IMG/VR virus record: IMGVR_UViG_3300044646_001937
Location: 124,001 to 188,000 of that record
Strand: one strand, 5' to 3'
DNA: 64,000 bases
A program made the position numbers and the translations under genes. This document shows positions 39,361 through 58,300 of the stretch, piece by piece. The notes below the pieces were generated by a model that was given only the letters and a program-made list of their open reading frames with translations, ran no database searches and had not been told where the DNA came from. Numbering within the stretch: position 1 is the first letter of the stretch; every line of letters begins with the position of its first letter.

Positions 39361-40239
39361 ATGCCATGGGTAGATAGTTTAGACTGGTTATCATTAAACG
39401 CGTTAAGAAAATACCCAATAAGGGAAGGTCTTAGCGCGTCTAGTGATGACGGTCTATTTTCTATACCAGACACATTGATTGTAGATTTTTCACTTTGTGC
39501 ATCGTCAGATGTGGCAAAAAGATTCTATATATCCAACATATTCAATAAACTTACAGCCATAGTAATCACCATATCAGATGATGAAGATGTTGTTGTAGGT
39601 ACGTTTGAAGCAACCGCACAAGAAGAAGATCTTACATATTATTTAAACGCTACAGCCGCCTATGCTAGAGCCAACGGAAAACTCACTATAGGCTCTTTTA
39701 AAGATTTGCAATATCAGCCATCAGGTAGCTTCACCTTTTCCATAACGGCTACAGAATTTGAACCAAGAACAATTATTCCAGGACTAAAAGGCATTGATCG
39801 TATCAGTTTTACAGATAACATAAACGGCGAACAATCACTAACAGGTAGTGTGCTGCTTACATCCAGAAATAACTTAATTTTTTCATACGCCGACAATAGA
39901 GTGTATATGGATGCTGGTGGAGATATAGGGTTAAATAAGCCATGTGCCACAGGAAATTGTGTTAAGAGTATAAACGGTGTAAAACCTGATCCTTTAACAG
40001 GAGATGTCGGACTTATAGGTATAGACTGCTTGAGTATATTTAGCGATAAAGCACATACTTTAAAGATAGAAGACCTTTGCTGTGTGCCCTGTGCGGGCTG
40101 TAATGATCTGGAAGAATTGACTGCCAGGACGATTGAATTAGAGAATAAACTTTTAGATTTAAGAGATCTCTACAATCAAGCAAACGCCCAATTACAGACT
40201 TATTTAAATACTATAAACTCCAATTGCGCATGTCCTTAG
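39361..40239 (+). CDS. Structural protein with Cys-rich C-terminus and coiled coil, paralogue of the 40264 N-terminus and of 63293
   Basis: Motifs NALRKYPI, CVKSINGVKP, CCVPCAGC followed by a heptad coil and CACP. Confidence 0.55.
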   Translation: MPWVDSLDWLSLNALRKYPIREGLSASSDDGLFSIPDTLIVDFSLCASSDVAKRFYISNIFNKLTAIVITISDDEDVVVGTFEATAQEEDLTYYLNATAAYARANGKLTIGSFKDLQYQPSGSFTFSITATEFEPRTIIPGLKGIDRISFTDNINGEQSLTGSVLLTSRNNLIFSYADNRVYMDAGGDIGLNKPCATGNCVKSINGVKPDPLTGDVGLIGIDCLSIFSDKAHTLKIEDLCCVPCAGCNDLEELTARTIELENKLLDLRDLYNQANAQLQTYLNTINSNCACP

Positions 40240-40263: not shown

Positions 40264-43200
40264 ATGGCAGCGCTGGAGTACCTAACGCAGAATAGTCTAA
40301 CATCACATCCTTTTAAAAATTCTTATGGGCTTGAAGAGGGGACAGGTGCTGTCGACGGTTGGTTTTACGACATTCTATTTGTTTCGTATGACGACTCTAT
40401 TCGTAGAGTATACCTCCAAAAAATAGAAAAAAAGGAAAACGGCAGTTTAGAGATAGGGATCAATAACGCTGAAACGCTAGCTAGGCTGCCTGAGGGTCTA
40501 ATAACTATAGCCGCTGAAGATGTTGTAGATCATTATGCCAATAAAATAAAAAGTTTTGTAGGCGTAGCCAAATCAAAGTTTGCTATTAAGTTTGTGATTG
40601 GTCCAACTTTGGCGGCTAAAGAAGCTTTTTCAGAAAATTACCTACCTGCAGTAACCGAACTTTCAAGCGATGTAACAGTATTAAACACTGTCAGGGTGAA
40701 TTCTATTACATTTGAGGCTTATGACGGACCAATTTTAAACACTGTAAAGCTATATACTGGAGAAGAAATAGCCCTAGTCGAGCCCAGATATAATTCAACA
40801 TTTACACTAACAGACACAAGCTCCGGCGAGTTGAGTGTCTCCGCAGGTAGCGGCGCTGGACTGTATGACAATTGTCCAACCCCAGGAAGTATAACCGATG
40901 TTCATACTTTAAATGAAATACCACCAAACTCAGAAGGAACTTTATTTCTACATGCCACAGAGTGTCATTCATTAAATTTATTAACAACTAATGACGAACT
41001 TATATATGGTGATCAATTAGACACCTACAGATCATTTACTTCACCTGGTAATACAGAACCGTTCAATGCAGTTAATCCAGAACACACTATAACTTTAGAG
41101 AATTTTTGCAGCGTTAAGTGTCCCCATGAAAACGTAAAAGCTTTAGCGTATTATATTAATCGTATAACTGACGGAGCTTCTGGACTAGCTGACATAGCGG
41201 TTAGAAATACAGAAACTAGAGGTATAGGTAGTGCTGAAGGAACAGAATTTCATGTAGATAATGCAGATTTCTGTGATGCTGCTGCGAACATATTCTTAAA
41301 ATGCCCTGTAGATAGTGAAGCATTCATTCCATGCAATCAGGGTTTTATTAAATATTTGCACGAAGGACGCACATTGCAGGTGTCCTACGATAACGCCACA
41401 ATTACAAATTACACAATTGTTTCTGTGATTAATGAGAATACTGTATTACTAGACGGCGCTCCGTCTGGAATAATGGGCAAAATCCCATTTAGGGTAATTG
41501 ATAGTGGTGTTATAAGTAATATCAATTGCGCTAGCAGTCTTTATAACAAACAAAATGACGATAAATTAAAACCATACTTTAAAGTAAGATACAGTACCAG
41601 TGAAGCATTCAATTCGGATTTTGAGTATGTCACATACGCAGCAATATCTGTAGGTGTATTTAATCCAGGTCCAGAACCTGTGCGACTCAATATAGCCTTT
41701 AATCCAAATGGACTAGGACAACAAGGCAGTTTTAAAATAAGAAAAACAGATTCAATCTACGTTTCCAGCGAAAGTGTAGTTGACTTAGATTGTAAAGAGC
41801 ACGCATTTGTAGAAGCAGTCTACTATATCAAGTGCGGAGAACCTGCCAGCAATTTTAGTATATTGGTAACAAACATTACAGCCAACCCAGATGAGATATT
41901 AGGAGATGGAGCATATTACCTACCTCCGTTAGTTGGTGTGAGTTGTCCAGGAGACATAGCCGGAGCAATAAACACCGTGCAAATTGTAAAGCAAGACACG
42001 GACACATTTAGCCAAATCATTGGCGTTGATCCGTTAGTTCAAGATGTTAAAATTTATGGAACACTTCCTGATTGGTTGACTATAACATTTCAGCCAGCAC
42101 AATCAGGACAGCCCAGCTCTTCACTAGTGCTTACAGGTACAAAAATATCTACAAATAATTATAATACGGAATATAATTTGTATGCAAGATACACAGGCAT
42201 TGCAATACCTGTGGTATCGCAGCTAGTTATTCAGTATGTGGCTCCGCCCATATTTATATATCCTACAGAGAAGTATTTTACTCAGGAAAAACCTCTAGTT
42301 ATTGACCCGCTCATAATTTATACCGAAGAAAATCCACTAACGCAGCTTACTGTGAAAAACATGGATAAGCCGCTTAGCTGGAACGGTGACAATTTTAGTT
42401 CTTATGGAGTTGACGTAATTGCTGAACGCGAGCTACCTCAGGGACTAACGCTAGACACGGTTACAGGAAAAATAACAGGAAGGTTGTTAGAGGGGGTAAC
42501 GGACGAAGGATACTGGAAAATAGCTTTAACAGCTACAAATCCTGCAGGTATAGTTTCTCAAAATCTTTATCTGGGGGTATCCAAAAGAGCCATCCCTGTA
42601 ATTTCTTTTTTACAGCAGTTACCTACAGTCATAGATAACTACACCCAATATACGATTGAGGAGCCTTTGTGTTCGTTTAAAGCCACAAATGATCCTATCC
42701 TTCTATATCAGACGACAGATAAATTACCGTCAGGACTTAGACTGGACACCACCAAAGGCGTTATATATGGCAAGATTACTGAAACAGCAGCAGGAACCAA
42801 AACAATCAATGTTTACGCTAGGAATTTTTATGGAAAATCCATACTTCCGCTAGAAGTAACGATCTCATATACCATATATAAACAACCAGAAATTCAAGCG
42901 CCTACACAGTTTGCAAGATTTAATGGTGAGGACGGCTCCACACTAGAAGAGCCACTATGTACAATAGTTGCAACACAAGCCTATGGAGGGCTTAATAATT
43001 TTGATCCGCTACTTACAGACGCCACACGCAATCATTACACAGCCACAAATCTACCTCCTGGTTTTTCAGTAGATCTTTATACCGGTAAAGTCTATGGAAT
43101 CCTAGATACTTCTGAAGGTTTTTCAAGAGCCTATGCGGTAACATTAAAAGCCTCTAATCTAGTTAATACCGCAACTGTACAAATTTACATTACATTTCCA

Positions 43201-46200
43201 AATGTAAAATTGCCTGTAATTACAAATTTGGCGAGTGGTAGTTTGTTTAAAGTTACTAGGAACCTAGAGTATTCCGTAGAAGCTGGCCCACTGGCGTCAA
43301 TATATGCGATCTATTTAGACCCTATAATTATCGCCACAGGTTTACCTGCAGGATTAACCTGCCTACCTACCGGAGAAGTAGTAGGTATGGTAGACTCTTT
43401 GCTACCCGCCGGAGATTATACCGTTTCATTTAGGGCACAAAATAGATATGGAGTATCCACCCCAGCTATTGTATGTATCGTACGAGTGGGGATTGAGCTA
43501 CTTAGCCCACTACCTAACTCAATGTTAAACTTATCTGTGAATGCACAGATTACACCAATACAAATTACAACAAGCCAGGGTGTGCCAGTAACACTTACAG
43601 TCAGGAATTTACCGGCAGGGCTAACATTTAATAATTCACAAATATACGGCACACCGGTTACAGTCGGCAGATCTAAAATATACATAACCGCGTCGGCTGG
43701 AGTCTTCGGTATAATAAAAGCCGTCATAAACGTATCCGTGTCAATTCCCACATATAGTCTTTCAGGTGCAGTTGTGGGTGTCGACTTAGCAGCGGCAACA
43801 AATGTTTTTTTAACCATAACCAGTGTAGAAACTGGCGCTATATACACAATAAAAACTACAAGCACGGGCACATACCAACTTAATGGGCTGTATGCAGGGA
43901 TATACAACGTATCCGCCCGTAAGGATCGATTTGAAATAGAGCCAATCACAAGAACAATTACAATTGTAAATACGGATGTTGCATTGCAGAGTTTTTTAAT
44001 TACAGGACCATACAGACTTATAGTCGGTACAGTAACCAACGCAATTAATAAAAGCGGTGTAGAGAACGTGGCGATAATTACATTTAATAGGACTGTGTAC
44101 ACAGATACAGCAGGCAGGTTTTTTATAAATTTATTACAGAACGAAGAAATCACAATTACTGCGGATGCTGTTTCTTATGTGTTTAATCCAAAAACAATAG
44201 ATATACCGATTAGTAATGAAGACTCAGGAGGTTATTCGTTTAAAGCCACTCCCTCGCACAATATTTCAGGAACTATAGTTTCTAAAAACATTGAAGTTCC
44301 TGCAAATATTGGAGTTCTGATAGACAATCAGAACACTGGAGAAAAATATTACGATATAGCACCTGCAGGCAGCATTTCAGTGCAGGCACTTGACGGAAAA
44401 TACAAAATATATCCTAACCCTGAAGCATCAGATTATTATAATAGTATATGGCAATTTAAGCCAAAGTATATACCTGTAGAGGTGAATGGTCTGTCGATTC
44501 AACTAGCGAAATCGTTTAACATATTTTCAGGTAAAACAATATCAGGAAGAGTTATTGCTCCGATATATGAAACAGAAATTGGTCTACCTATTCCTGTTGC
44601 TGGTGTGGCGATTACTGCCGCAAATATTACTCTAGATCAGACAAGGTTTATTTGGCTGAAGTTGGATGCAAACAATCCACCGACTATAAAGCTAGATCTA
44701 AAAACAATTAGAGCTGCCGCAGCATCCACTGAAAACATTCCTGTGACGGTTGATTTTACAACAGGATTTTTTAATCTAAGAGGTACAACAGCAGGACAGC
44801 TTTCAATGGATGGATACACTGCGTCAGTAGAAGAAATAATTCTTCTGAAAGATCAATTTTATCCTGAGTTAAACGGAATATATACAATTGTAAACCCAGG
44901 CTCTGCAACAGAGACGTTCCATCTCGTCAGAAGTACTGAAGCAAACTACAATGAATCTTTAAAAGTTGGTGCAGCAATATATGTAATTGGAGGCATCACA
45001 AACAGCGCTGCTACATATTATTTAACTACTGAAGATCAAGTTACAGCAATTTCAGATATAGATGGAAATTTCACACTGACAAACGTCTACCCAGACACTT
45101 ACAACCTATACGCTCATAAAGAAGGTGTTGGTATATTAAGTATTCCTCAAGTCAACGTATCCACGAATAATGCAACCAATCTAGTAATCGTGCCTAATAC
45201 ATATCAAATCACTGGCACGATACAGTATAGAGCGAATTATTTAAGCACGACGAAGACTCCGCTGACAGATGTTCGCATCAGTCTTTATAGAGCAAAAGAT
45301 TTATTCTTACTTAAAAAAAGCGAGAAATCAAAAGCAGACGGCTCATGGATATTTAGATCTGTACCTGACGGAGACTATATATTGAAAGCTGAATTTAGAG
45401 GAATGACACCTACAGTAGTTGAACAAAAAATTACTGTAGATGATGGCGATGTTAATCTGGTTGCCATGGAAGTGTATATAGCTGTTTTTACAGCACCATC
45501 CGCACCTATAGTAAATAACATACAGGGTGGTTATAGGTCACTAAAGGTGACAGTGAGCGAAAACCCAGAAGACATAGGTACAGAAATCCGCTATTACGAA
45601 TATTCGCTAGACTCAGGCACAACATGGGCAACTGCAGTGAAAACTTCAGACAGCGAGATATTGATCCCCGATCTCCCTCCAGCAGAAAAAACTATCTTTA
45701 AATTAAGAGCCAGAAACTTATGGTCGTATGGACCTGAGGTTGAGCTGCAGGGTGTTGCATTTGACCGCCCTGGCGCACCTACAATTACAAGTATAGCGCG
45801 CAAAAATAAAGAGCTGTTGGTAAATTTTTCACCACCACTATTTTCAGGCGGGCTATACATAGACAACTATGCATATTCCACAGACGGAGGTATCACTTTT
45901 TTACCTATTACTCCAGCAAACATAACTGGCTCATTTAGTATACTTAAAAGATCAAATAATGGGTTGGATTTGGTGAATGGTGAAAAATATCAAATAGTCC
46001 TTCACGCGCTAGCTGGAGAAGCTGCAGGTTTAGACTCAGAGCCGGAAATAACATTCCCTGTAGGTACTCCTGGACCGTCGAGACTTCTGAGTGTTGTCGG
46101 CGGAAGATTGAATGAGCTAGATATAAGCTTTGAACCTCCAGAAATAACCAATGGTGCACCTGTGGCAGATTATGCATATTCTTTAAATGGAGGTCCATTT

Positions 46201-46977
46201 ACACCATTAGGTACAGTTAACAGTCCCGCAACAATAACAAATTTACTCAACGGTACAATCTATAGCGTGAGAGTCGCCGCAATCAATTCTGAAGGCGTCG
46301 GTGATGCCTCTAATTCAATTCAGGCAAGAGTTGGTGTAACTGCTGACGCTCCAACTATATTTAAGGCAGAGCACGCAGGAGGAGGCAAACTAAGAATTTA
46401 CATACAGCCTGGCGCTAATGGATTTTCACCAATAACAGGCTACGTTTATTACATTGATTCCCCTGAAGGGGGCACAGAAAACAGCAACACAGCCACACCA
46501 TTAGGCGGCCTTACACCTGACAACACTGCAATAGTGTATAGTAAACTTGATGGGCAGGGCGGAACAATTGGGACTATGTTTGAAGAGTCAAGATTGTACA
46601 CAATCAGCATAGCTGCCGTTAATGAGTTTGGAACTAGTACAGCTTCTGAAAAAATATCTTTTTTTGTAGTATATACAGCACCTCGCGCGCTAATAGTTAA
46701 TTCGTATATAGAAGAGCATGATAGAGTCATATTCAACTTATCTTTTGAAAACAATGACACAGGAGGCGCTGGAGGATATGTTACAATAACCAGTATAATT
46801 AGAGACTCTGATGGAAATATAATTACGGATACGTATGGAAATCCCTTGGATAATCTTCAAACATACTATAATGTTTTCACTCGTTCAGAGTATACCTATA
46901 CTGTAGCTGGGTTGACTGCAGGGGTTACGTATGATATCACAATTTTAACATCAAATGCTGCAGGCACAGGAGCTTAG
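40264..46977 (+). CDS. Giant Ig-like fibre/adhesin (2237 aa): He_PIG-type Ig repeats, carboxypeptidase-regulatory-like repeats and FN3 repeats
   Basis: About five LP.GL.L...TG.I.G repeats, ISG.V...T...G.Y/F repeats, and Y.YS.D.G / L.NG..Y.V.V.A.N..G.G FN3 repeats. Confidence 0.8.
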   Translation: MAALEYLTQNSLTSHPFKNSYGLEEGTGAVDGWFYDILFVSYDDSIRRVYLQKIEKKENGSLEIGINNAETLARLPEGLITIAAEDVVDHYANKIKSFVGVAKSKFAIKFVIGPTLAAKEAFSENYLPAVTELSSDVTVLNTVRVNSITFEAYDGPILNTVKLYTGEEIALVEPRYNSTFTLTDTSSGELSVSAGSGAGLYDNCPTPGSITDVHTLNEIPPNSEGTLFLHATECHSLNLLTTNDELIYGDQLDTYRSFTSPGNTEPFNAVNPEHTITLENFCSVKCPHENVKALAYYINRITDGASGLADIAVRNTETRGIGSAEGTEFHVDNADFCDAAANIFLKCPVDSEAFIPCNQGFIKYLHEGRTLQVSYDNATITNYTIVSVINENTVLLDGAPSGIMGKIPFRVIDSGVISNINCASSLYNKQNDDKLKPYFKVRYSTSEAFNSDFEYVTYAAISVGVFNPGPEPVRLNIAFNPNGLGQQGSFKIRKTDSIYVSSESVVDLDCKEHAFVEAVYYIKCGEPASNFSILVTNITANPDEILGDGAYYLPPLVGVSCPGDIAGAINTVQIVKQDTDTFSQIIGVDPLVQDVKIYGTLPDWLTITFQPAQSGQPSSSLVLTGTKISTNNYNTEYNLYARYTGIAIPVVSQLVIQYVAPPIFIYPTEKYFTQEKPLVIDPLIIYTEENPLTQLTVKNMDKPLSWNGDNFSSYGVDVIAERELPQGLTLDTVTGKITGRLLEGVTDEGYWKIALTATNPAGIVSQNLYLGVSKRAIPVISFLQQLPTVIDNYTQYTIEEPLCSFKATNDPILLYQTTDKLPSGLRLDTTKGVIYGKITETAAGTKTINVYARNFYGKSILPLEVTISYTIYKQPEIQAPTQFARFNGEDGSTLEEPLCTIVATQAYGGLNNFDPLLTDATRNHYTATNLPPGFSVDLYTGKVYGILDTSEGFSRAYAVTLKASNLVNTATVQIYITFPNVKLPVITNLASGSLFKVTRNLEYSVEAGPLASIYAIYLDPIIIATGLPAGLTCLPTGEVVGMVDSLLPAGDYTVSFRAQNRYGVSTPAIVCIVRVGIELLSPLPNSMLNLSVNAQITPIQITTSQGVPVTLTVRNLPAGLTFNNSQIYGTPVTVGRSKIYITASAGVFGIIKAVINVSVSIPTYSLSGAVVGVDLAAATNVFLTITSVETGAIYTIKTTSTGTYQLNGLYAGIYNVSARKDRFEIEPITRTITIVNTDVALQSFLITGPYRLIVGTVTNAINKSGVENVAIITFNRTVYTDTAGRFFINLLQNEEITITADAVSYVFNPKTIDIPISNEDSGGYSFKATPSHNISGTIVSKNIEVPANIGVLIDNQNTGEKYYDIAPAGSISVQALDGKYKIYPNPEASDYYNSIWQFKPKYIPVEVNGLSIQLAKSFNIFSGKTISGRVIAPIYETEIGLPIPVAGVAITAANITLDQTRFIWLKLDANNPPTIKLDLKTIRAAAASTENIPVTVDFTTGFFNLRGTTAGQLSMDGYTASVEEIILLKDQFYPELNGIYTIVNPGSATETFHLVRSTEANYNESLKVGAAIYVIGGITNSAATYYLTTEDQVTAISDIDGNFTLTNVYPDTYNLYAHKEGVGILSIPQVNVSTNNATNLVIVPNTYQITGTIQYRANYLSTTKTPLTDVRISLYRAKDLFLLKKSEKSKADGSWIFRSVPDGDYILKAEFRGMTPTVVEQKITVDDGDVNLVAMEVYIAVFTAPSAPIVNNIQGGYRSLKVTVSENPEDIGTEIRYYEYSLDSGTTWATAVKTSDSEILIPDLPPAEKTIFKLRARNLWSYGPEVELQGVAFDRPGAPTITSIARKNKELLVNFSPPLFSGGLYIDNYAYSTDGGITFLPITPANITGSFSILKRSNNGLDLVNGEKYQIVLHALAGEAAGLDSEPEITFPVGTPGPSRLLSVVGGRLNELDISFEPPEITNGAPVADYAYSLNGGPFTPLGTVNSPATITNLLNGTIYSVRVAAINSEGVGDASNSIQARVGVTADAPTIFKAEHAGGGKLRIYIQPGANGFSPITGYVYYIDSPEGGTENSNTATPLGGLTPDNTAIVYSKLDGQGGTIGTMFEESRLYTISIAAVNEFGTSTASEKISFFVVYTAPRALIVNSYIEEHDRVIFNLSFENNDTGGAGGYVTITSIIRDSDGNIITDTYGNPLDNLQTYYNVFTRSEYTYTVAGLTAGVTYDITILTSNAAGTGA

Positions 46978-47001
46978 TAGTAAATTAATATTTAAAGCCG
47001 T

Positions 47002-50000
47002 ATGATAATCAAAGTTACTCCAAAATTTACAGCTCCCAAGGGATTGTTTGTAACGCATCAATACGGTAACAGCCAATACCCATTAAACATATATAATTAC
47101 CCAGACAGTGGCAGCGCTGGGCTATTAATTTATGTAAAAGTTGCAACCACGGGCGGACAACCAGTAACAGGATATACGCTTGAAGCATCAGCCTTAGGGA
47201 TACCTACTATAAATAGAGACATCACTTGGATCACCCCTGAAGAGGCGGAGCAGTCATCTATCGGTGAGTATCTTTTAAAAATTACAAATCTCACACCCGA
47301 AAAACAATACACATTAAAAATAGCCTTAAAAAATAGTGTAGGTGCAAGTGAAATTGTAACAATACCTGGAAGTTCATTAACAATTCCGAAAGTTCGCCCT
47401 ACCATACCCAGTGCGGAATTTTATAATTACCAACCTACTGACGCTCGCGTACAATTAAAGGTAACAATAAGCCCTCAAGAATCCTTTGAAAACCTTATAG
47501 TTTTTGGATATTTAAGATACGATGGAGAGCCTCCGTCTGATGAAACTCTTTTAAATGACCTGCGTAACACTCGCACAGACATGGCAGGAGCCGGCGAAAT
47601 TTACACAAGATTCCCACTTGAGTCAGTGCAAAGTTACTCATACAATCAAATATCTGGAATATGTGATCAAAATTTTGGTTCGCCTTATGATCTATATAAT
47701 CTTTGTATGAGATGCTTATGGGGAGCTCCCTACAATTTCTCAGGCTTTGTGCGAAGGACTGTTCCCCTATACCCGCTAATAACCACTCCTGGGGATAAAT
47801 ATTTCTGGATACCTAGCGGGGAAAATACCTATGAGGGAGGTATAACAAAAAACACCACTACGATTGTTTATCCGTTACTGCTACGCAGCGAAGGCGCGTA
47901 TTATTATGGAGAAAATCTTACCTCCACCCCGCAAGCCTATGCAGAATCGGCTGGGCTTTCTAATGTATTTAATATATTCTCATATTTTACAGGAATTCCT
48001 GACCGCATAGATAGTGTACTTGAGCATGGCTGGGAGTATACTTCTAATGGCTGGCGATATGTACTGTCCTTTTACCCTCCGGCAGATGGCGGATTAAGCA
48101 TAACAGAATATGGTTATTATTTTGACCGAACTGCCTACGACAATAATGCATATGCTCCTCCGTATATTCCAAACATAGATTCGGACGATCTGACGTATGT
48201 TAATACTTTTGAGCAACGCTATGACTCTGATTGGATGTCATACATAGCCCTGATTATAGATCCCCCTAGATTCTATCCATCAGGCTCTCAAGACTTAATT
48301 TCTTATCGTATAAGGGTAACAATAGCTGCAAAAAATGCTAACGGAGCAGCACCTGTAGCTCCCGCGACAGAGATAGTCAGAAATACTGGAGGGTATTTCT
48401 ATAATTATTACCTTGGTAATTTTAATATATTAGCCATAGGTATTGTTGACCACTCTGTCACTCTAGAAACAATAGGTGGTCAGCAATATCAAAACATTCA
48501 AATCCTTGAGTATCCTTATTTGAAAGTTTACTACGAAATCGATAGAAACAATCCGGATTACGTAGCCAGAATGAATCATATACTAGCCGACCCTAACTAT
48601 GGCGGCTTGTTTAGCCCACGCTATAAAACATCAGCTTTTAATGGTTGGTTGATGTTTGATAGCGTGGATGAAGATTCTTTTGGTTTTTTTGCGACTAGTA
48701 ATTTTTTATACGAGCTTGCGCCTCAAACTACGTATGATTACACCATGAAACTTGATACGCAGGATTATGTGTACTCTCCTGAAACAAATTTCACATTTAC
48801 CACAGGAGCTATTGTCCAAGTTGTAAGCCTTGTAGCCAAATCACACTACAGCGGAAATGTTGTGTTAGCATATACCGGCGAAACTTACGCATTACTGTCC
48901 AGGCAAATTAATTGGTATTATAAAGAGTTTGGAAGTGAAATTATTAACATAGGCGGAGCAATATACAAAACATTTGATAAAGTATTTATGGTCAATTCTC
49001 CTGCTCTTATAGCAGGAAAATCCTATTACTTTTATATTAAAGTGACTAATATTTTTGGACAGTCGGAATATTCCCCTGCGTCTAACCTAGTCTCAATCAC
49101 ACTACTAACAACACCAGCACTAGCCCCAAGGGTGACAGTAATTCCTTCAGACTCGATGATTACAGTTTATGTGGACAAATTGTCTAATGCTTTAGCTGGA
49201 GGTTTGCCTGTGACAAACTACCAGATGATGTTTTCACCCACCGACGACCCAGATTACCAGTTTACGAGCTTTAACCCACCGAGATCACAATCATCATTAT
49301 ATCCAGCATTTTATTACCCTCCAGGGTCATTTGGAAACCCTTTAGCGGTAATTGATGGACTGGCCAATGGTCGTGAATATATGATATCGGTGAGCGCAAT
49401 TAACGATAAAGGAGTAGGTCAACAATCACCTATTGTGAAAGCTACTCCACTAGGTGTACCTAATTTTCCTAGAGTATTAGCTACCGTAGGAGACAGAAGT
49501 GTTACGGTCGCTTTTATCCCCCCTTTGGATACCGGAGGGTCACCCATACTAAAATACCAGTATTCTACAGATGCTGGGCAAACCTGGTTAGACGCTTTTG
49601 TAGCAGGAACCACGAATTACGATTTAACTAGTCCTATAGTTATAACCAAACATAGCGTAAATAACCAATCTCTCAACAACGGACAGTTATACCAAGTTAG
49701 ATTGCGCGCAGTTAACGCACAAGGACCAGGAGATGCCTCCATAACAATACAAGCCACTCCTGTGGGCCCACCTTCGCCGCCCGTTATAGATGAAATCGTT
49801 TCATCTGATAAACAATTAGTTGTCAAGTTTACCCCTCCTATAGCTCAAAATGCTGACACACCTGTACTGGGTTATAAATACTCTCTAGATGACGACTATG
49901 AGAATTTTAATAAAGACACATATATCACAGTTGTGCCAACAAACAACCAGTTCACAATATCTGGAGCAACTATCCCAGTTGGACTAGCTCCAAATATAAA

Positions 50001-52323
50001 TTTACGCAACAACAGTACATATACTATAAGATTAAAAGCATACAACGTTTTAGGTGATGGAGAGCCGTATGTTGCAACAGGAACTCCTATGCCATTACCT
50101 CCAGCATTAGAAATAACCCGTATAGTTCCTAGAAGTAAAAAACTAGACGTGTATTTTGTTCGTAATTATGTGATTGGAGGACCTGAAGTAGGTAATATTG
50201 ATAGAATATGGTATACTTTGAACGGAGGAGAAAAGCTTACAGAAACAACTTTAGATTTGGTAAGCCCGTTAACCATTACCGGCGGAGATCCAAGCTCGAC
50301 TGGACTGCTTACAAATAATGTTCCATACACTATAAGACTTTATGGTAAGAACACTGCAGGTTTTGGAGCAGCATATAATGCAGTAACAGGAATACCTACA
50401 GCCACATTACCAACAGCTCCCACCATCACAAGCCTGGTAAGCAACAATCAATCAGGGCAGCTTGTAGTGTCATTTAATCCCCCCACAGACATTGGAGGGA
50501 CAAGCATTATCGACTACGAGTACATAGCCTACACCAGCGGGCAAGAGACATCCGCCATTGCAGTCTCATCTAATAAAACCAGTAGTCCTATAGTTATAAA
50601 CAAGCTAACTAACGGTGAAGTGTACTTTGTCAAAGTGCGTGCTGTTAACGCTGTTGGTGCCGGTCCGTTTTCTAATTATTTATATAGAAGACCGCTCACT
50701 TCTCCTTTGTTTGAGATAACCAGAATAGACCCTGTGGCTACTGATCTGGTATCGCCACAGCTTCAAGTAACATATGATGTACTAGAAGATGGAGGTTATG
50801 GGTTATATAGTAACCCTGAAGGACCCTTCACTATACAGTACAAAGTAAGCAAATTTGCAAATTTTAGCGGAGCCGCGTGGCAGTCGTATAGAACAACTGG
50901 AAACTTATTCAAGTATGTTACAAATCCATTTTATATAGATGTGCCATTGGAGTACGACACTGAGTATTACGTTAAAATAAAAGCAGATCTAGACGTCAAT
51001 CAGACAGAAAATGCAGGTAATTTTATAGAATCAGAGCCTTTTGCTGTCACACCCCAAAAAACAATACCACCGTCAGCGCCAATAATCACGCAAATGCTTG
51101 CCCCAGAGAGAGGCACTGTACATATTTATTTTACACCAGGGCCAGCCAACGGAACAACCGGCACGCTGATTGGCTATAAATGGGTAGATATGAAAGCAGG
51201 CGGTACTACACATTTATTTTCCACAGCCTCAACGTCCCCCCTAGTAATATCCGGATTAGCTGATGCATATTACGTTAATTTAAAACTAGTTGCGTACAAT
51301 GAATACGGAGATAGCGCACCCTCCAACGAGGGTGCGGTGGTTACACCTGGCCTACCTTTTGCACCTACAATATTAAACTCAAAATTTACACAAGAAACAG
51401 GGGTACTTTTGGTAAATTTTATACCACCATACTATGTTATTCCAGAAAACCATAGACCTGTAATAAACTACGCGTACACTGTTACTCAAGAAGGCCTTCC
51501 ATATCCAAATGCAACCGTACTAGCCACACCCACAACAACATCACCTCTGTCGATTAGTGTTAGCGGAATTGTTGGAGACGGTAGTAGATATCTAGTCAGA
51601 TTGGCCGCAATAAACGAAATAGGTGTTGGCGCATTTTCTGCTGTTAACATATTTACGCCACCACTGGGGCCTGAACCACCTGAAATACTGGGATTTGTAC
51701 CAGGACTTAACTCAATAACTGTTAACTACAAAGCACCAGAAAAAAGCGGTTCAGGTAATCTGATAGGGTATACGTGTAAATACTCAAATAACGCTGAACC
51801 ATTTACGTTCAGCTCTACTGGCGAGGCTACTGGAAGTTTTACAATACCAAATTTAACTGTTAATACGTATTATGTACTTATATTGAGGGCAGTGAATGCC
51901 TTAAATGTTGCAGGATTACCGTCAAAAGCAGCTACAGCACATACAGCAATTGCACCAAGCATACAGCAGGTAGGATACGACACACAGACATCCGACATAT
52001 TCTTAATACCTACAGGGTCCACCGGAGCCACCGGAGCATCTACACCCGTTGACGGCAGTTTCTTGTTTATCTCATCTCGTCTATATAGATACGGCTCGTA
52101 CGCCTATTCCGACCAGCTTAAATACGTAAATGGTAAAGCATACAGGCCGTACACAGGATGGTATGACACTACCAGCGATCAGATAATACAAGGTGCTCCC
52201 GGCAAATATTATACTGACGGTGTAGCAGATACAAATTCTCAAGATTTATTAAACGCTAAACCGCTTACAGGTGCAGGGTGGGTCGATTCTTCAACATTGG
52301 TCATTGGAGCTACAGGAGGCTAG
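47002..52323 (+). CDS. Giant FN3-repeat fibre protein (1773 aa)
   Basis: Many P.AP.I....V.F.PP...GG..I..Y.YS...L.NG..Y.V.LRAVN..G.G repeats. Confidence 0.8.
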   Translation: MIIKVTPKFTAPKGLFVTHQYGNSQYPLNIYNYPDSGSAGLLIYVKVATTGGQPVTGYTLEASALGIPTINRDITWITPEEAEQSSIGEYLLKITNLTPEKQYTLKIALKNSVGASEIVTIPGSSLTIPKVRPTIPSAEFYNYQPTDARVQLKVTISPQESFENLIVFGYLRYDGEPPSDETLLNDLRNTRTDMAGAGEIYTRFPLESVQSYSYNQISGICDQNFGSPYDLYNLCMRCLWGAPYNFSGFVRRTVPLYPLITTPGDKYFWIPSGENTYEGGITKNTTTIVYPLLLRSEGAYYYGENLTSTPQAYAESAGLSNVFNIFSYFTGIPDRIDSVLEHGWEYTSNGWRYVLSFYPPADGGLSITEYGYYFDRTAYDNNAYAPPYIPNIDSDDLTYVNTFEQRYDSDWMSYIALIIDPPRFYPSGSQDLISYRIRVTIAAKNANGAAPVAPATEIVRNTGGYFYNYYLGNFNILAIGIVDHSVTLETIGGQQYQNIQILEYPYLKVYYEIDRNNPDYVARMNHILADPNYGGLFSPRYKTSAFNGWLMFDSVDEDSFGFFATSNFLYELAPQTTYDYTMKLDTQDYVYSPETNFTFTTGAIVQVVSLVAKSHYSGNVVLAYTGETYALLSRQINWYYKEFGSEIINIGGAIYKTFDKVFMVNSPALIAGKSYYFYIKVTNIFGQSEYSPASNLVSITLLTTPALAPRVTVIPSDSMITVYVDKLSNALAGGLPVTNYQMMFSPTDDPDYQFTSFNPPRSQSSLYPAFYYPPGSFGNPLAVIDGLANGREYMISVSAINDKGVGQQSPIVKATPLGVPNFPRVLATVGDRSVTVAFIPPLDTGGSPILKYQYSTDAGQTWLDAFVAGTTNYDLTSPIVITKHSVNNQSLNNGQLYQVRLRAVNAQGPGDASITIQATPVGPPSPPVIDEIVSSDKQLVVKFTPPIAQNADTPVLGYKYSLDDDYENFNKDTYITVVPTNNQFTISGATIPVGLAPNINLRNNSTYTIRLKAYNVLGDGEPYVATGTPMPLPPALEITRIVPRSKKLDVYFVRNYVIGGPEVGNIDRIWYTLNGGEKLTETTLDLVSPLTITGGDPSSTGLLTNNVPYTIRLYGKNTAGFGAAYNAVTGIPTATLPTAPTITSLVSNNQSGQLVVSFNPPTDIGGTSIIDYEYIAYTSGQETSAIAVSSNKTSSPIVINKLTNGEVYFVKVRAVNAVGAGPFSNYLYRRPLTSPLFEITRIDPVATDLVSPQLQVTYDVLEDGGYGLYSNPEGPFTIQYKVSKFANFSGAAWQSYRTTGNLFKYVTNPFYIDVPLEYDTEYYVKIKADLDVNQTENAGNFIESEPFAVTPQKTIPPSAPIITQMLAPERGTVHIYFTPGPANGTTGTLIGYKWVDMKAGGTTHLFSTASTSPLVISGLADAYYVNLKLVAYNEYGDSAPSNEGAVVTPGLPFAPTILNSKFTQETGVLLVNFIPPYYVIPENHRPVINYAYTVTQEGLPYPNATVLATPTTTSPLSISVSGIVGDGSRYLVRLAAINEIGVGAFSAVNIFTPPLGPEPPEILGFVPGLNSITVNYKAPEKSGSGNLIGYTCKYSNNAEPFTFSSTGEATGSFTIPNLTVNTYYVLILRAVNALNVAGLPSKAATAHTAIAPSIQQVGYDTQTSDIFLIPTGSTGATGASTPVDGSFLFISSRLYRYGSYAYSDQLKYVNGKAYRPYTGWYDTTSDQIIQGAPGKYYTDGVADTNSQDLLNAKPLTGAGWVDSSTLVIGATGG

Positions 52324-52391
52324 TGTTACTTATCTGGTTAAATGATTGCAAGAAGAGGAGCTATGGCTTATTATCTGTATGATATAGCTGT

Positions 52392-55300
52392 ATGGAAAAA
52401 ACATCATTAATTGAATATAAGCTTAAATCTTATCTTGGCGGGGTATTAGCAAAATTAAAGTATGTGAATTCGCCTTTAACTCCCTTAACTAAGGTAGAAT
52501 ATTCTTTTGATGGTGTTACATGGACCGAACTAAGCTCTCAAGCTTTTTCTAATACTATTATAGCTCAAGATCCGGTTACTCCATATATTTATACTATTGA
52601 AAGAATTTTTGTACCTCTGGCTGAATATAGAGACTATTTAATCTCATTCAGATTGACAAATACTGTAGCTACTGGAGCACAATCTATTCCTGGAATAGGG
52701 CGTAGAGGAGGACCACCTGAAGCTCTTGTGGTAAAACCCACGTTGACACGCTTACCATACATGAATCGGTACACCAACGTAGCTTTCAGCGTTTTTTCAA
52801 CTCTGTCGAGCACCGTGGTAGGAAAAATGATTGTGACATTTGAATATGACCCAATGCTTGATGGTGGTAGCGGATCAACGCCCATAACGGATGTACTCAT
52901 CTCTCTAGATAGTCGGCAAACATGGCTGCAACCGGACACACTTGAAGTGTTCAAAACAACCAAACAAAGCAACGTTGTTGAAACCTATGTTGCTGGTGAT
53001 ACAAATAGGACGTTTTCAGGTATTGGTACTTTTGTAAGAGTTTCTTACACTTTACCTCAAGGTGGAGATTTTACGTATCTGCAAGACTCTCCAATATATT
53101 ACAAAACTATTAATTTCGCAGGAGAATCTCCGGCAATTAAAATAGTGACAAAATTACCTCTAGTAATTGTAACATCCCCAAACAACCCGGACTATCCTAT
53201 ACTAAATAAAATTGAATCTTCCGATTGGTATTTTGGCAGCAACCAAGAAGTCCGCAGAGACCTGCAGGTGTATTTGGAATTACCAGAATCTACAGGTTTT
53301 GGAGAGCCGTACCAATTGCAATCCACGCAATTACTAGATTTAGCTGAGCTTACCCCTGTAAGCGTTACACCGCCAGAAGGGCAGCAGGCTTTAAAAAACA
53401 TAGACCTTACAGTGACTACAGTGGGCGACACATTCAGAAGGGGTGAGCGCTTAAAAATATACAGTCAGGCAAACCCATCTAAAATATGGTTTATAGCTCA
53501 AGTAACAAGTAATTCCAGAGTAAATCCTGTTTTATCTTTAGATATTTTAGAAAAATACGCTGTGACACCTTATAGCATAAGTGTAAATAGCTTCGCTAAT
53601 GGGGCCGATGAATTCCATAAAAATACCCCTTTGTGGAATATACATAATCACCCTATAAACTACCCGCTTTTAGATTTGTATGTTGGTGATCAGTTAAGAG
53701 ATGACGATGTTTTTGTTAGTGGTAGAACTTTATCTTTTTTTAGAAAAGATATAAGTTTTAACGATATATACTTCTATGCAACAATCATAAGCAAAGATAT
53801 AAATATTGGAAAATTAACCATTAAAATAACATCTAAAAGCGATTGCTTGCAGAACAATTGTCACAACAATCAATCTTTCTTAACTTCATGGGAAATAACA
53901 CCGATTATGACTTCTGCGGATACTTTCCCAACAGAAGCAAATGACTGGGTAATTGAGCCGTTATACCCTGTATTAGAGGCAAGATACAACTTAGCTGAAG
54001 CAAGCAATCCGAATTCTATAATTGAAAAAGGTACAGCAGGATTAACCATAATTAAAGACGACAACAACATTCCAACTTTGGGATATTTTACAATACGAGG
54101 CATTTCTGATATTGAAACGTATGCATTAAATATGACCTATGGTCCTGCGGGCGCTGAATTTTTGTCGCGATTATCCCCAACGTCAACAATTCAATGCAGC
54201 CTCTTAAGTATAGCTCAGAAAGTTACTTTTTTACCGATACGTACATACACTGAAGCCGTATACACTAACGAGTTTGTATCTTGGTGGTACTTATCAAAGC
54301 TTACACCGCTAGTGTCACAAACTGAAATAAAATTTAAATTACCTTTAGCTCCAAACGACAATTCCACTATAGCTGTAGCGTATAGAAAAATAGTTCGAAC
54401 TGAAATTGAAAATATCGAAGGAATAACTACCCCAAGTAGCTTGTATGAAGGGCGTGTAGTAGGTGAGTTGAATTTTGTTGCTTTACAGTCCACACCAACA
54501 ACTGACGCACTTAGAGAGATTACATTTCCTATAGATGAGGCTACACATTTAAACAATGAAGGCCGCCGCGTTGAGATAAGTTACGAGATAAGCTTTTTAA
54601 AAATTATTAGAAATTTAACCTCAAATAACGAGGAGCTTCTAACTGAACTAAATAAATTAAAAGATAAAATTCCAGGAGATATTGTAAAAACTACAATTAG
54701 TATTCCTGGAGCGCAGCCAATAGATTTTGTGCTAGGAAGAGAACTGCTGAACCCCACCGCAATAGGATTAACATTAGTCTACAATGATCAGCTTCCAGGC
54801 TACGAATATCTGGATTTTAAAGACACTCAAGCGCAAGATATTACATTAAAGCAGACAGATTTTTACCGCAGTACGATCGAATACTCCACCAACCAAGGCG
54901 GGAGCTGGAGACATGTACTAAAACCTGGAATTCCTGCATATGATGAAAAATTTTCTCAAGTAAATACCACGTATTATCAAAACATCGGGGCTGACATTAT
55001 TACTTTTACAGAAGAAAATTACAATGTATACCCAGCCGGGACTCTTCTATCTGGAGAAACAATTCAGGACTATACCTATGTCGTAGAAGCGCTGGATGCG
55101 TTTAGTGTTAGGATAAGCAAACCGCAAAAAGCATCAGCATTTAGTCCAGCAGTTAAAAGTTCCGTGCTCGCAAAGTATACAGGCACATCTACTACATACA
55201 CTAGATTTCAAAAAGGTACTGCAATCATGTATGTAGATAAGTATCTAGACTACACGACAGACCTGCCAGTCAAGATAGCAAACACCACATTGACCGGCGC

Positions 55301-58300
55301 GGCCAATATAATAGCGCAAAGACCATACATGCTCGGAAATGTAAAAAATTACAATCAATCTACAGGCAGGCTTGAAATTGTTATTACAAGTATCACAACT
55401 TCACCAGTTTCTGGTGCACTTGATAATTTGAGTAGTTGGGAAATAACGCACGCGTTAAGGAAAAAAACATATATAGATAAATTTATTAGTATCCTATACG
55501 GTTACACTAATAATTATTTTAGCTCAGCGAGCAACACAAAAAGACCCACAATTTATGTTGGCAATCTTGCCGAAGCTCAGGCATACAGTATATGGTTACG
55601 TACCAGTAATACACTTTATGGTAAAGGTCCCATAATTAAGCTAAGCGGAACCACAACAGCCTTACCCAGTAGCCCGCCCACAGTTGATGTAAAGCTGACA
55701 ATAGCAGGATTTGATATAGATATTAGTCCAGGATTTGCGGAAAAAGCATGGATACAAGCGCCACAGGCAGCTATTCAAGGTTATGAATATGCAATAATAA
55801 GCGGAAACGTATGGTATGACGTTGATGTAACTCCAACATGGAACACATTAAACAATGGTGTAATTACGGGGTTGACTCAAAATGCCGAATACATGCTCAG
55901 TTTTAGATCTGTTTCGGCTAATGGAGCGGGTCCAGCTACAGTGCCTAAAGTGTATAAAACAGCCTCTTTGCCTCTTAAAATAACCAGTCTGACAGGATTC
56001 ATGCCTTTGATCGGTATTACCGAAATAGTTCTTCCTTCAGAAATAGTTTTATCGGCAATCCCCTACACTATTGAATATGAATTGGAGCAAGGGTATTACG
56101 ATAAATTAGGTAGATATATAGATGACCCTACTTTAGCTGGTAAAACCGGCATTTTAGCAGATAACTCGCTATTGAATCTGTACACAGATTTAACTGCAAC
56201 AGCAATATTCAATGAAACGCAAATTAACAGTATCCGCACGTATTTTGTAAAACTTAGATGTGTTAATGAGGTGGGACAAGGACCTTGGTCCGATACATTC
56301 ATATTATCAGTACTTTCACCAGAAATTAGACCTGTTAAAGTAAAGTGGTCTCCGGGTCCTTCATGCATACTTATTGATGAGATAGGTTTGATGGATACTG
56401 AGCTAAAGTTGAACTTAACTAGAGGTACAAGACCCGCAGAAATAAAGACACTTAATTCTGCGGTAAGATGGCAATACGCAAAAGTAGTAACCGTCGCCCC
56501 CAGAATACTTACAGACAACCGCATATATTACACAGGTAACGAGCAAAAATATACTGATGCAGGGCAAGAAGAGCCCGTCATTCATTTAAAAAATGCCCTA
56601 GCGGCAGTTGAGTGGCAGAATATCGTATCAAACACAATACCCATGGAAGACGAGCAAAGCGTTATACTACTCTTCAGAGCAGCTAACGCAGCCGGAGGTA
56701 TCGAGATGACTGATGTGTTAGGCTATGACGGCGCTTATAGTAGATTTACTTACAATCCCATAGAACCGTACGGATTTGCGTCAAAGTATTTTCAAGACGG
56801 TCCAGAGTTTGATACCTACCATAGAACTAAAAGCATTTATCAGTACGACACTGATCGCCCCAACCGTTGCTATGGAGCTTTATTTAAAAAAACCAGCTTC
56901 TCAGCAAACTGCCCATTACCACGACTTGCCTATAACAAGTATGGTAGATATATCAAATATCAAGAAGAGTTATTTTCACCTTTCTTTAACCTTGAAGAAA
57001 GGACAATTAAGACGCAACCATTTTTGGATTTTGAATTATCTTACGTTAAAAACTATGAGCAACTCGGAGGAATTAACGATACAGTATACACCTCTCCCAT
57101 GCTTACCTGTACAGAATTACCTTGCGAGCTAGGTGTAAGCTCATCTGTGCAGGTTAGTGCAGCAACTGAAGACATTTTGGCCCCCAATGATTTTGTTATT
57201 ATCACCGACTCATTAACTGGAGGGGTTGCTCACCGTTACGCATTAGCTTACGTTAAAAGCGTTGATGAAATTGACGAATCCAACAAAACTAAAAGCGGAT
57301 ATAAAATTTTCTGGCTCAATGAAGAGACGACTGCAGCAGCATTAGGTAGTGGGTTTATGTCACCATGGCCTGAAGGCTTACCCACATCAGTGTATAACGT
57401 TGTGGATAGCTCTTCATTCCGCCTACACACATTAAGTGAACTTCAGCCAAAATTTGCAAAAGATCCATGGACCATAACTTCAGGGTATCTCCCTGTATCT
57501 AACACACCAGGGATAATTGCCGCATTTAAAACTACATCTAATTTATTTTCAGGAGCATTACCTTTTCGTGATGCTGACGGTAAAGACTTTTGGAGCGTAA
57601 CATTAAACATGAGTATGACCAATTATTTTGAAAATACTTATGTAGGTATAAAAGTTTACAAATATAATAATAACCCAAACCAATATGCAACAAACACTTT
57701 AACTTTACTTGGAGAATCTAGGTTTTTCAGATCAGAAGAACCTGATATTAATGTTTTCGCGCAATACAACGCAGTGTTTTTTATACCTGAAGAAGGTATT
57801 ATTTTTGACATATATGACGAGATCTATCTTGAAATATTTGCATGCATTAAGCCAAACACACTTACACATCCCCCCGGTACATTAAGCACGCAACATACAG
57901 TTACAATTAAATTTGATAGCAGTTCTTATTTAAGTACAACGATACCTAAAGATTTTAAATACAGAGATCAAATGGTAACGTTCGACGTTTTAAGGATTGG
58001 TCGACTAATACCGTCTAATAGAGCATTTTATACACCTTCAGCAGGTGCCCGCTCATACATAAATAAGTACGCTGCGAGTGTAGGTTTTCTTATACAAGGA
58101 AACGTTAACTGGGCGTCTCTTCGACAAAGTCTTGAGCAGATGCTGCCTGTATATAGACCATATGATTTATTTCCAGCACAGTCACCCATAGCAATCGAGC
58201 AAGGCCTTGTCGGCGATTCTTGGTCTCAAGGAAATTCCTATGAGCTAGTGACTCTTGTACCTAGTAGGTATTACACTGACCCTTTAACTCCATCGATAGT

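What the first reader, a model, noticed from the sequence alone, without database searches (positions are those of the whole stretch)
46880..47045. FN3 domain broken at the gene junction: strand donation, +1 recoding or recent fission
Seen: ORF 40264 stops at ...TYDITILTSNAAGTGA*, before the last FN3 strand (intact copies read NAQGPGDASITIQATP). The next ORF is in the same frame and begins (SR)MIIKVTPKFTAP, which looks like the missing strand plus the next repeat start. Removing the 21 nt TAGTAGTAAATTAATATTTAA would restore an ungapped repeat. Alternatively, skipping one base at GCT-T-AGT gives SSKLIFKAV*, which also fits the strand and ends in an ATGA overlap with 47002. Inference: the two giant proteins may be chained by donor-strand complementation as in pili, or there is a +1 shift at the stop codon, or an indel/assembly error.
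Basis: partly seen in the sequence, partly recalled or inferred. Interest (0 to 1): 0.6.

Follow-up and report, generated by a model that had tools for sequence, protein, structure and literature searches.

The report
Split FN3 joint between phage fibre genes
In a 204-kb lake phage, one fibronectin-type-III domain of the giant tail-fibre is divided between two neighbouring genes; this split is real, old and conserved, relatives have similar splits, and the two proteins are probably joined when the second gives the first its missing beta-strand.

Summary
Gene 1 (40264-46977, 2237 aa) stops after the FG loop of its last FN3 domain, at position 80 of a 96-position family profile. After a 24-nt AT-rich spacer with three more in-frame stops, gene 2 (47002-52323, 1773 aa) starts in the same frame with a G-strand-like heptapeptide plus linker.

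It is not an assembly error. Contigs from three studies carry the identical junction.

It is not recent. A relative (L038/L039, 70% aa identity, synonymous sites saturated) stops at the same residue. It has a homologous 27-nt spacer and the same N-terminal extension on gene 2.

The +1 reading is not supported: the shift site and the +1 ORF are not conserved, and the +1 peptide does not fit the G-strand profile.

At least three other clades split an FN3 at this gene boundary, at A|B, E|F and F|G. Each has an ATG at the complementary point, and two have fused orthologues that are contiguous across the break. In the E|F clade the two half-domains are the best-conserved parts of both genes.

Best explanation: an ancient gene fission, with the domain re-formed non-covalently by strand donation. 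That last step is inferred, not shown; the one co-folding job gave no verdict.

The parts
39361..40239 (+). Conserved 292-aa baseplate-module gene; upstream boundary of the fibre 'slot'
   Evidence: A 292-295-aa gene sits directly before gene 1 in all relatives' loci. A baseplate wedge hit (phrog_6) lies at 33284-34906.
40264..46977 (+). Fibre gene 1 (P0001, 2237 aa): Cys-rich N-terminal anchor domain (about 600 aa), then He_PIG, CarboxypepD_reg and FN3 domains
   Evidence: Thirty-one homologues share the N-terminal domain (alignment A1).
46672..46974 (+). Last FN3 domain of gene 1, truncated after the FG loop (strands A to F only)
   Evidence: The profile match ends at position 80 of 96. The AF2 model has six main strands and no G strand, pLDDT 69. 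The relative ends at the same alignment column.
46975..47001 (+). Stop TAG plus a 24-nt AT-rich spacer with three more in-frame stops (TAG, TAA, TAA)
   Evidence: The spacer is unique in the genome and homologous to the 27-nt spacer of L038. No terminator-like site is present.
47002..47037 (+). N-terminal extension of gene 2: G-strand-like heptapeptide (47002-47022) plus a Pro-containing linker (47023-47037); proposed donor strand
   Evidence: G-strand matrix score 4.73 bits, rank 1 of 187 ORF N-termini. In L038, 11 of the first 14 residues are identical, with no indel. Residues 1-12 are coil and lie outside gene 2's own first FN3 in the AF2 model.
47002..52323 (+). Fibre gene 2 (P0002, 1773 aa): FN3 string with no anchor domain
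   Evidence: The orthologue is intact at 1750 aa in L038/L039. pN 0.26 against saturated pS 0.71.
47452..48801 (+). Hypervariable stretch of gene 2 (aa 151-600)
   Evidence: 33-39% identity to L038 against 61% for the whole protein. HMMER found no relatives among 1.84 billion representatives.
52392..63242 (+). Fibre gene 3 (P0003, 3616 aa), also without an anchor domain
   Evidence: The orthologue follows gene 2 in the relative: 3624 aa on P0006's contig, cut by the contig end in L038/L039; conserved N-terminus in L038.
63293..64000 (+). Conserved gene with the N-terminal NKNQYRKYP motif; downstream boundary of the fibre slot
   Evidence: The same gene directly follows the fibre gene or genes in most loci where the next gene could be read: after one ORF in class A, after two ORFs in L002/L036/L037, after three ORFs here.

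Best explanation
The giant baseplate-attached fibre of this lake jumbo phage is encoded in pieces. An ancient gene fission cut one FN3 domain between its FG loop and its G strand. Gene 1 ends with a six-stranded, G-less FN3. Gene 2 is translated on its own from ATG 47002, 24 nt after the stop, and probably coupled to termination of gene 1. It has no anchor domain. It begins with a seven-residue G-strand-like segment and a linker, followed by its own complete FN3.

The most likely mechanism is that this N-terminal extension inserts beside strand F of gene 1's last domain and completes the beta-sandwich. That would fasten the 1773-aa distal protein to the 2237-aa proximal protein without a covalent bond. 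The topology resembles donor-strand complementation in pili, and the process is fragment complementation of a split domain.

Shown: the split is real, old and conserved; both genes are intact and under purifying selection; the extension is conserved and lies outside gene 2's own first domain; recoding signals are absent; and the same kind of split recurs in related phages, some of which have fused orthologues.

Inferred: that the two chains actually bind through this strand.
For: The junction is identical in contigs of three studies.

The profile end is at 80/96 in both WIN and P0006, against 87-90 in complete termini. The extension fits the G-strand matrix, and the 21-nt-deleted reading is ungapped.

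Relative L038/L039 stops at the same residue, has a homologous AT-rich spacer with two in-frame stops, an ATG, and the same extension pattern with synonymous and conservative changes. pS is 0.70-0.75 (saturated), while pN is 0.18 for gene 1, 0.26 for gene 2 and 0.12 for the first 14 codons of gene 2.

In the AF2 model of gene 2 residues 1-130, residues 1-12 are unpaired coil and the first FN3 has its own strands A to G. In the AF2 model of gene 1's last domain, there is no G strand.

Family context: FN3 is split at this gene boundary in L008/P0032 (A|B), in L002/L029/L036/L037/P0010 (E|F) and in L004 (F|G). Each has an ATG at the complementary point. Fused orthologues are contiguous across the break: P0012/P0019 at 2442|2444 and L015 at 1473|1475. 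In the E|F clade the two half-domains are the most conserved parts: 93% against 79% for gene 1, and 82% against 57% for gene 2, with dN/dS about 0.05-0.09.

Synteny: the fibre slot between the 292-aa gene and the NKNQYRKYP gene holds one, two or three ORFs.

Precedent: the split nozzle of phage A1002, where strands missing in one gene product are supplied by another (PMC13730344).
Against: There is no direct evidence of binding. The only co-folding job (ESMFold2) gave 'no answer', which is neither for nor against, and a single-chain read-through fold could not be run.

In this lineage the truncated domain is not better conserved than the rest of gene 1 (57-61% against 70%). The 11/14 identity of the extension is not significantly above the 61-65% background, so the extra-constraint signal seen in the E|F clade is missing here.

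No fused orthologue of this particular junction was found. A single seven-residue strand may be a weak fastener for a large distal protein. There are no RNA or proteomic data.
Confidence: 0.6

Rival explanations
1. The fission is real, but there is no strand donation. Gene 2's product attaches to the virion or fibre through other contacts, or acts on its own. The G-less domain is tolerated as a frayed end, and the N-terminal extension of gene 2 is a retained remnant or just a linker.
For: The truncated domain is slightly less conserved than the rest of gene 1. Conservation of the extension (11/14) is not statistically above background. The co-folding job gave no support (which counts neither way). 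In L005/L025, gene 2 starts with a half FN3 for which gene 1 offers no matching half, so half-domains at N-termini can exist without an obvious partner.
Against: Gene 2 has no anchor domain and lies inside the single fibre slot. The extension has kept its length, its strand pattern and its Thr-Pro end while synonymous sites became saturated. In the E|F and A|B splits neither half could fold alone, yet both halves stay under strong constraint.
Confidence: 0.27
2. Recoding joins or extends the proteins. Candidates are a +1 shift at GCT-T-AGT giving a nine-residue tail, stop read-through, or ribosome bypassing of the spacer.
For: The +1 frame is open for 9 codons here and 15 in L038, and it supplies the conserved loop serine (+4.4 bits). 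A hairpin covers the stop (z -2.06). Phages are known to add FN3/Ig domains by programmed frameshifts, for example SPP1 gp17.1* (PMC9022992).
Against: Four in-frame stops here and two in L038 rule out read-through. The shift site, the stop codon and the length and end of the +1 ORF are not conserved. The +1 peptides score -3.6 to -8.7 bits as G strands. For bypassing, the only in-frame GCT landing codon is codon 11 of gene 2, which would delete the G-like strand, and L038 has a different take-off codon with no match. The other split clades use different frames and overlaps, yet every one has an ATG.
Confidence: 0.05
3. The junction is an assembly or sequencing artefact, or a recent inactivating mutation in a single fused gene.
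For: The same frame on both sides and the ungapped repeat after removing 21 nt look like an insertion.
Against: The junction is identical in three studies' contigs. The same split occurs in two further assemblies of a 70%-identical relative. Both ORFs are intact and constrained.
Confidence: 0.01

Closest known systems
Donor-strand complementation/exchange in chaperone-usher pili
   Same: An Ig-like sandwich lacks its C-terminal G strand, and the N-terminal extension of the next subunit in the chain is proposed to fill the groove next to strand F. This gives a linear, non-covalent fibre.
   Different: There is no chaperone or usher, it is not periplasmic, and it is a single joint between two different giant proteins rather than a polymer of pilins. 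The domain is FN3 and arose by fission of a once-continuous domain. Binding has not been shown.
Split nozzle of Pseudomonas podophage A1002 (gp39/gp42; PMC13730344)
   Same: A phage tail component that is one protein in relatives is encoded by two genes, and beta-strands missing from one product are supplied by the other.
   Different: That case concerns a beta-propeller/platform of the nozzle and is shown by cryo-EM. This case concerns an FN3 domain in a fibre and is inferred from sequence. The split here is recurrent at different strand boundaries within one family.
Engineered fragment complementation of FN3 (Dutta et al. 2005, Protein Sci 14:2838; known to me only from its title in a reference list) and SpyTag/SpyCatcher (own knowledge)
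   Same: A beta-sandwich domain is reconstituted from two separate chains, one of which can be a short strand.
   Different: Those systems are man-made, and SpyTag locks with an isopeptide bond. No sign of a covalent lock was examined or seen here.
Programmed frameshift addition of FN3/Ig domains to phage structural proteins (SPP1 gp17.1*, Fraser et al. 2006; via PMC9022992)
   Same: An FN3 domain lies at a gene end in a phage structural module.
   Different: Here there is no conserved shift site or conserved out-of-frame ORF. The downstream gene has its own ATG in every split lineage.
Lambda PaPa stf frameshift (orf401/orf314; own knowledge)
   Same: A side-fibre gene is broken into two ORFs.
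   Different: The lambda case is a laboratory loss-of-function mutation. Here the split is conserved across saturated synonymous divergence, with both ORFs constrained.

Membership tests
Fibronectin type III domain (PF00041) | Significant match to the family profile | tested here: met
   Pfam fn3 E 4e-15 in P0001 and 5.4e-31 in P0002. The last domain matches the own-family profile at positions 32-80.
Fibronectin type III domain (PF00041) | Complete seven-strand sandwich (A, B, C, C', E, F, G) in one chain | tested here: not met
   The last domain of gene 1 ends at profile position 80/96. The AF2 model has no G strand.
Donor-strand complementation (chaperone-usher pili) | Acceptor subunit lacks the C-terminal G strand of an Ig-like fold | tested here: met
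   and the same in the relative.
Donor-strand complementation (chaperone-usher pili) | The next subunit carries an N-terminal extension, outside its own fold, that supplies the strand | tested here: inconclusive
   The extension is present, G-strand-like, conserved and outside gene 2's own FN3. Pairing with gene 1 is not shown (one search gave no verdict).
Donor-strand complementation (chaperone-usher pili) | Dedicated periplasmic chaperone and outer-membrane usher; pilin family membership | not tested
   This is a phage virion protein. No pilin, chaperone or usher family appeared among the Pfam/PHROG hits of the 23 proteins scanned, but the whole genome was not screened. I do not file it as a member; the resemblance is in mechanism only.
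Split-gene fragment complementation (as in the A1002 nozzle) | The two adjacent gene products together equal one contiguous domain in homologues | tested here: inconclusive
   Met for the sister splits: P0012/P0019 and L015 are contiguous across the break. For this window's own junction no fused orthologue was found. Continuity rests on the repeat profile.
Split-gene fragment complementation (as in the A1002 nozzle) | Physical reconstitution of the domain from two chains | not testable with these tools
   It needs a structure or a binding assay. The complex prediction gave no answer.
Programmed +1 frameshift at a stop (prfB-like, SPP1 gp17.1*-like) | Conserved shift site and conserved out-of-frame extension | tested here: not met
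   GCT TAG T against GAG TAA T; +1 ORFs of 9 and 15 codons with different ends; poor G-strand scores.
Translational bypassing (T4 gene 60-like) | Matched take-off and landing codons that give a sensible product, conserved in relatives | tested here: not met
   GCC at 46997 lands out of frame, giving two codons and then a stop. The in-frame GCT at codon 11 would delete the strand. The take-off codon is not conserved in L038.

The most novel reading that the evidence does not exclude
A family of freshwater jumbo phages builds very long fibres from two or three giant proteins in series, joined by naturally split FN3 domains. In this reading the split domain is a selected, non-covalent plug-and-socket. 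It arose several times at different strand boundaries and allows distal, hypervariable fibre modules to be translated separately and perhaps exchanged. Such joints would be natural, covalent-bond-free counterparts of SpyTag-like connectors.
Probability: 0.4. Interest if true: 0.78.

Novelty: new variant of a known kind. Interest (0 to 1): 0.62.

Why it matters
If the strand donation is real, it shows a new way for phages to chain giant fibre proteins: by re-forming a domain that was cut by gene fission. It would add a viral, chaperone-free case to donor-strand complementation. It would also explain how genes of several thousand codons can be broken up without losing the fibre. The phages would offer a set of natural split-FN3 pairs, cut at four different strand boundaries, that could serve as protein connectors. 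For annotation, it is a warning that 'truncated' terminal domains and anchor-less downstream ORFs in phage fibre modules may be functional pairs rather than errors or pseudogenes.

Tried and rejected
- **Complex prediction:** the last two domains of gene 1 with residues 1-130 of gene 2 gave 'no answer' (score 0.29, mark 0.34). This is not evidence either way.
- **Read-through fold:** I named no other genetic code, because the genome uses TAA, TAG and TGA as stops.
- **Searches for relatives of gene 2:**
  - GenBank phages, blastn: no match.
  - IMG/VR with gene 2 residues 1-560: none.
  - Word searches with gene 2: only itself and generic FN3 proteins.
  - HMMER against 1.84 billion representatives with gene 2 residues 1-700: only itself and one weak FN3 hit. 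The reason became clear later: residues 151-600 are hypervariable.
It was obtained instead through two cluster members.
- **Bypassing** was considered and rejected; see the membership tests.
- **Hairpin over the stop** (46956-46982, z -2.06): not conserved in an obvious way and not pursued.
- **Promoter/terminator scan:** nothing above chance.
- **The 21-nt spacer as a mobile or repeated element:** it is unique in the genome.
- **Tree:** the careful tree search did not finish, so the quick IQ-TREE was used.
Full report
**What is in the window**

The window is bases 124001-188000 of a 204,454-bp virus record with direct terminal repeats. It has 40.6% G+C and uses all three standard stop codons. 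All long ORFs lie on the + strand. They form a very divergent structural module, with a head protease hit at 9187-10629 and a baseplate wedge hit at 33284-34906. Shine-Dalgarno motifs are not evident; the sequence upstream of start codons is A/T-rich.

After a conserved 292-aa gene come three giant ORFs:
- P0001 (40264-46977, 2237 aa)
- P0002 (47002-52323, 1773 aa)
- P0003 (52392-63242, 3616 aa)

P0001 has a Cys-rich N-terminal domain of about 600 aa, followed by He_PIG, CarboxypepD_reg and FN3 domains. P0002 is mostly FN3.

**Checking the observation**

The junction reads GGA GCT TAG TAG TAA ATT AAT ATT TAA AGC CGT ATG. There are four in-frame stops, a 24-nt spacer, and the next ATG in the same frame.

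I built a 96-position profile from 65 complete FN3 repeats of this protein family; the G strand occupies positions 83-89. P0001's last domain ends at position 80. Family members whose last domain is complete reach 87-90. Every other FN3 in the three ORFs has the loop serine, a G strand and a Pro-rich linker.

P0002's first seven residues score 4.73 bits in a G-strand matrix. That is the best of 187 ORF N-termini in the genome and is reached by 0.6% of random 7-mers.

**Not an artefact**

Logan contigs from three studies cover the junction with no differing letter and no indel:
- X1, a 147-kb contig that may be the source of this DNA
- X3 record 6 (46901-47073), from a crustacean metagenome
- X5 record 13 (46830-47018), from another lake

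These are contigs, so rare variants cannot be excluded.

**Not recent, and not recoding**

The N-terminal domain of P0001 has 31 homologues. The closest is P0006, at 70% identity over its whole length. It ends at exactly the same alignment column.

Its DNA was obtained through two cluster members, L038 and L039. There, gene 1 ends GGT GAG TAA. A 27-nt AT-rich spacer follows that is visibly homologous to the one here and has two in-frame stops. Gene 2 (1750 aa) starts in the same frame with the same extension: 11 of the first 14 residues are identical, there is no indel, and the changes are synonymous or conservative.

Between the two phages, synonymous sites are saturated (pS 0.70-0.75). pN is 0.18 for gene 1, 0.26 for gene 2 and 0.12 for the first 14 codons of gene 2. 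So the split predates a deep divergence, and both ORFs are under purifying selection.

The +1 reading fails on conservation:
- The shift site and the stop codon differ between the two phages.
- The +1 ORF is 9 codons ending in ATGA here, but 15 codons running into gene 2 in L038.
- The +1 peptides score -3.6 to -8.7 bits as G strands.

Read-through is excluded by the multiple stops. Bypassing has no productive, conserved landing codon.

**The family context**

This was the most informative result. I fetched loci of relatives and read each junction. In most loci where the next gene could be read, the fibre slot is closed by a conserved gene whose product starts with an NKNQYRKYP motif; here that gene is at 63293.

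- **Class A:** the slot holds a single ORF that ends in a complete domain.
- **Other clades:** the slot holds two ORFs, and the boundary cuts an FN3 domain:
  - after strand A in L008/P0032 (14-nt overlap);
  - after strand E in L002/L029/L036/L037/P0010 (TAATG, or an 8-nt overlap);
  - after strand F in L004 (16-nt gap).

The profile coordinates of the two halves are complementary. For L002 they are 2-46 plus tail, then 60-94. For L008 they are 2-15, then 16-96. Joined, each pair gives one full domain. Every downstream gene has an ATG exactly at the complementary point, although frames and overlaps differ, even within the E|F clade. This speaks for separate initiation and against any single recoding mechanism.

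Two of the splits have fused orthologues that are contiguous across the break: P0012/P0019 at residues 2442|2444, and L015 at 1473|1475.

In the E|F clade the half-domains are the best-conserved parts of both genes. The last 60 residues of gene 1 are 93% identical against 79% overall. The first 40 residues of gene 2 are 82% identical against 57% overall. Local dN/dS is about 0.05-0.09.

A quick tree of the anchor domain puts the four split types in different clades. The WIN/P0006 pair sits on its own long branch with 100% support. The careful search did not finish, and fibre genes are mosaic, so the number of independent events (at least three or four) is approximate.

**Structure predictions**

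AF2 was run with alignments of family FN3 repeats.
- The last domain of gene 1 was modelled with six main strands, a three-residue stub after the F strand, and no G strand (pLDDT 69).
- Residues 1-130 of gene 2 were modelled with residues 1-12 as unpaired coil, followed by a complete FN3 with its own strands A to G (pLDDT 69).

These results are compatible with a free donor strand and an open acceptor, but they do not test binding. The one complex job gave no verdict.

**Interpretation**

The fibre gene has been cut by fission inside an FN3 domain. Gene 2 lacks any anchor domain and starts with precisely the missing strand. The simplest way for it to stay on the fibre is for that strand to complete gene 1's last domain.

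This works like donor-strand complementation in pili, and like the strand complementation seen by cryo-EM in the split nozzle of phage A1002 (PMC13730344). It is not a member of the pilus family.

Caveats for this lineage:
- The truncated domain and the extension are not measurably more constrained than their surroundings.
- No fused orthologue of this exact junction is known.
- Nothing shows binding.

I put 0.6 on strand donation, about 0.27 on a real split without it, 0.05 on recoding, and 0.01 on an artefact or a recent inactivating mutation.

**Novelty**

I found no paper that describes split FN3 domains as joints between phage fibre proteins. The principles are known: gene fission with fragment complementation, and donor strands. 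I therefore rate it a new variant of a known kind, and of moderate to high interest because it is recurrent, conserved and testable.

Noticed in passing
window 47452-48801 (P0002 aa 151-600): This stretch is hypervariable. It is 33-39% identical to the L038 orthologue against 61% overall, and HMMER found no relatives among 1.84 billion representatives. It is a candidate receptor-contact or diversifying region in the middle of the fibre.
   Followed up: partly
L005/L025, gene 2 start at 19226: Gene 2 begins with half an FN3 (profile positions 52-83, strands E to G), but gene 1 ends in a non-FN3 module and offers no matching first half. The partner of this half-domain is unknown.
   Followed up: partly
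window 40264-40330 and 63293-63360: The N-termini of fibre gene 1 and of the conserved gene after the fibre slot (NKNQYRKYP type) look loosely similar. This may be a common baseplate-docking element.
   Followed up: no
window 52200-52392 (end of P0002, start of P0003): P0002 ends in a non-FN3 Gly/Tyr/Trp-rich module that looks similar to the C-terminal ends of P0007 and P0026. P0003 follows after 68 nt, begins with an FN3 domain and has no anchor domain. How gene 3's product is attached is open.
   Followed up: no
whole window, gene starts: No Shine-Dalgarno-like motifs are evident upstream of start codons; the leaders are A/T-rich. Many gene ends overlap the next start or lie within a few bases of it. 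The host is unknown.
   Followed up: no
window 46956-46982: A predicted RNA hairpin covers the last codons of gene 1 and the first two stops (fold of 46940-47070, z -2.06). Its significance is unknown.
   Followed up: partly
window 45500-48500 in runs X3-X7: The phage, or near-identical strains (95% identity or more), occurs in lake-water, freshwater and crustacean metagenomes of several studies. Run X6 carries a variant with scattered substitutions.
   Followed up: partly
window 31747-32379: The orthologues of this 210-aa ORF in related loci carry a Pfam Sigma70_r3 hit (weak in some, unmarked in L002). This may be a phage sigma-like factor gene inside the baseplate module.
   Followed up: no
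clade of P0010/P0014/P0020/P0024/P0012/P0019: The fused forms (P0012/P0019) nest among the split forms in the anchor-domain tree, and the split forms use two different junction layouts. This points to repeated fission, re-fusion, or recombination of fibre modules.
   Followed up: partly
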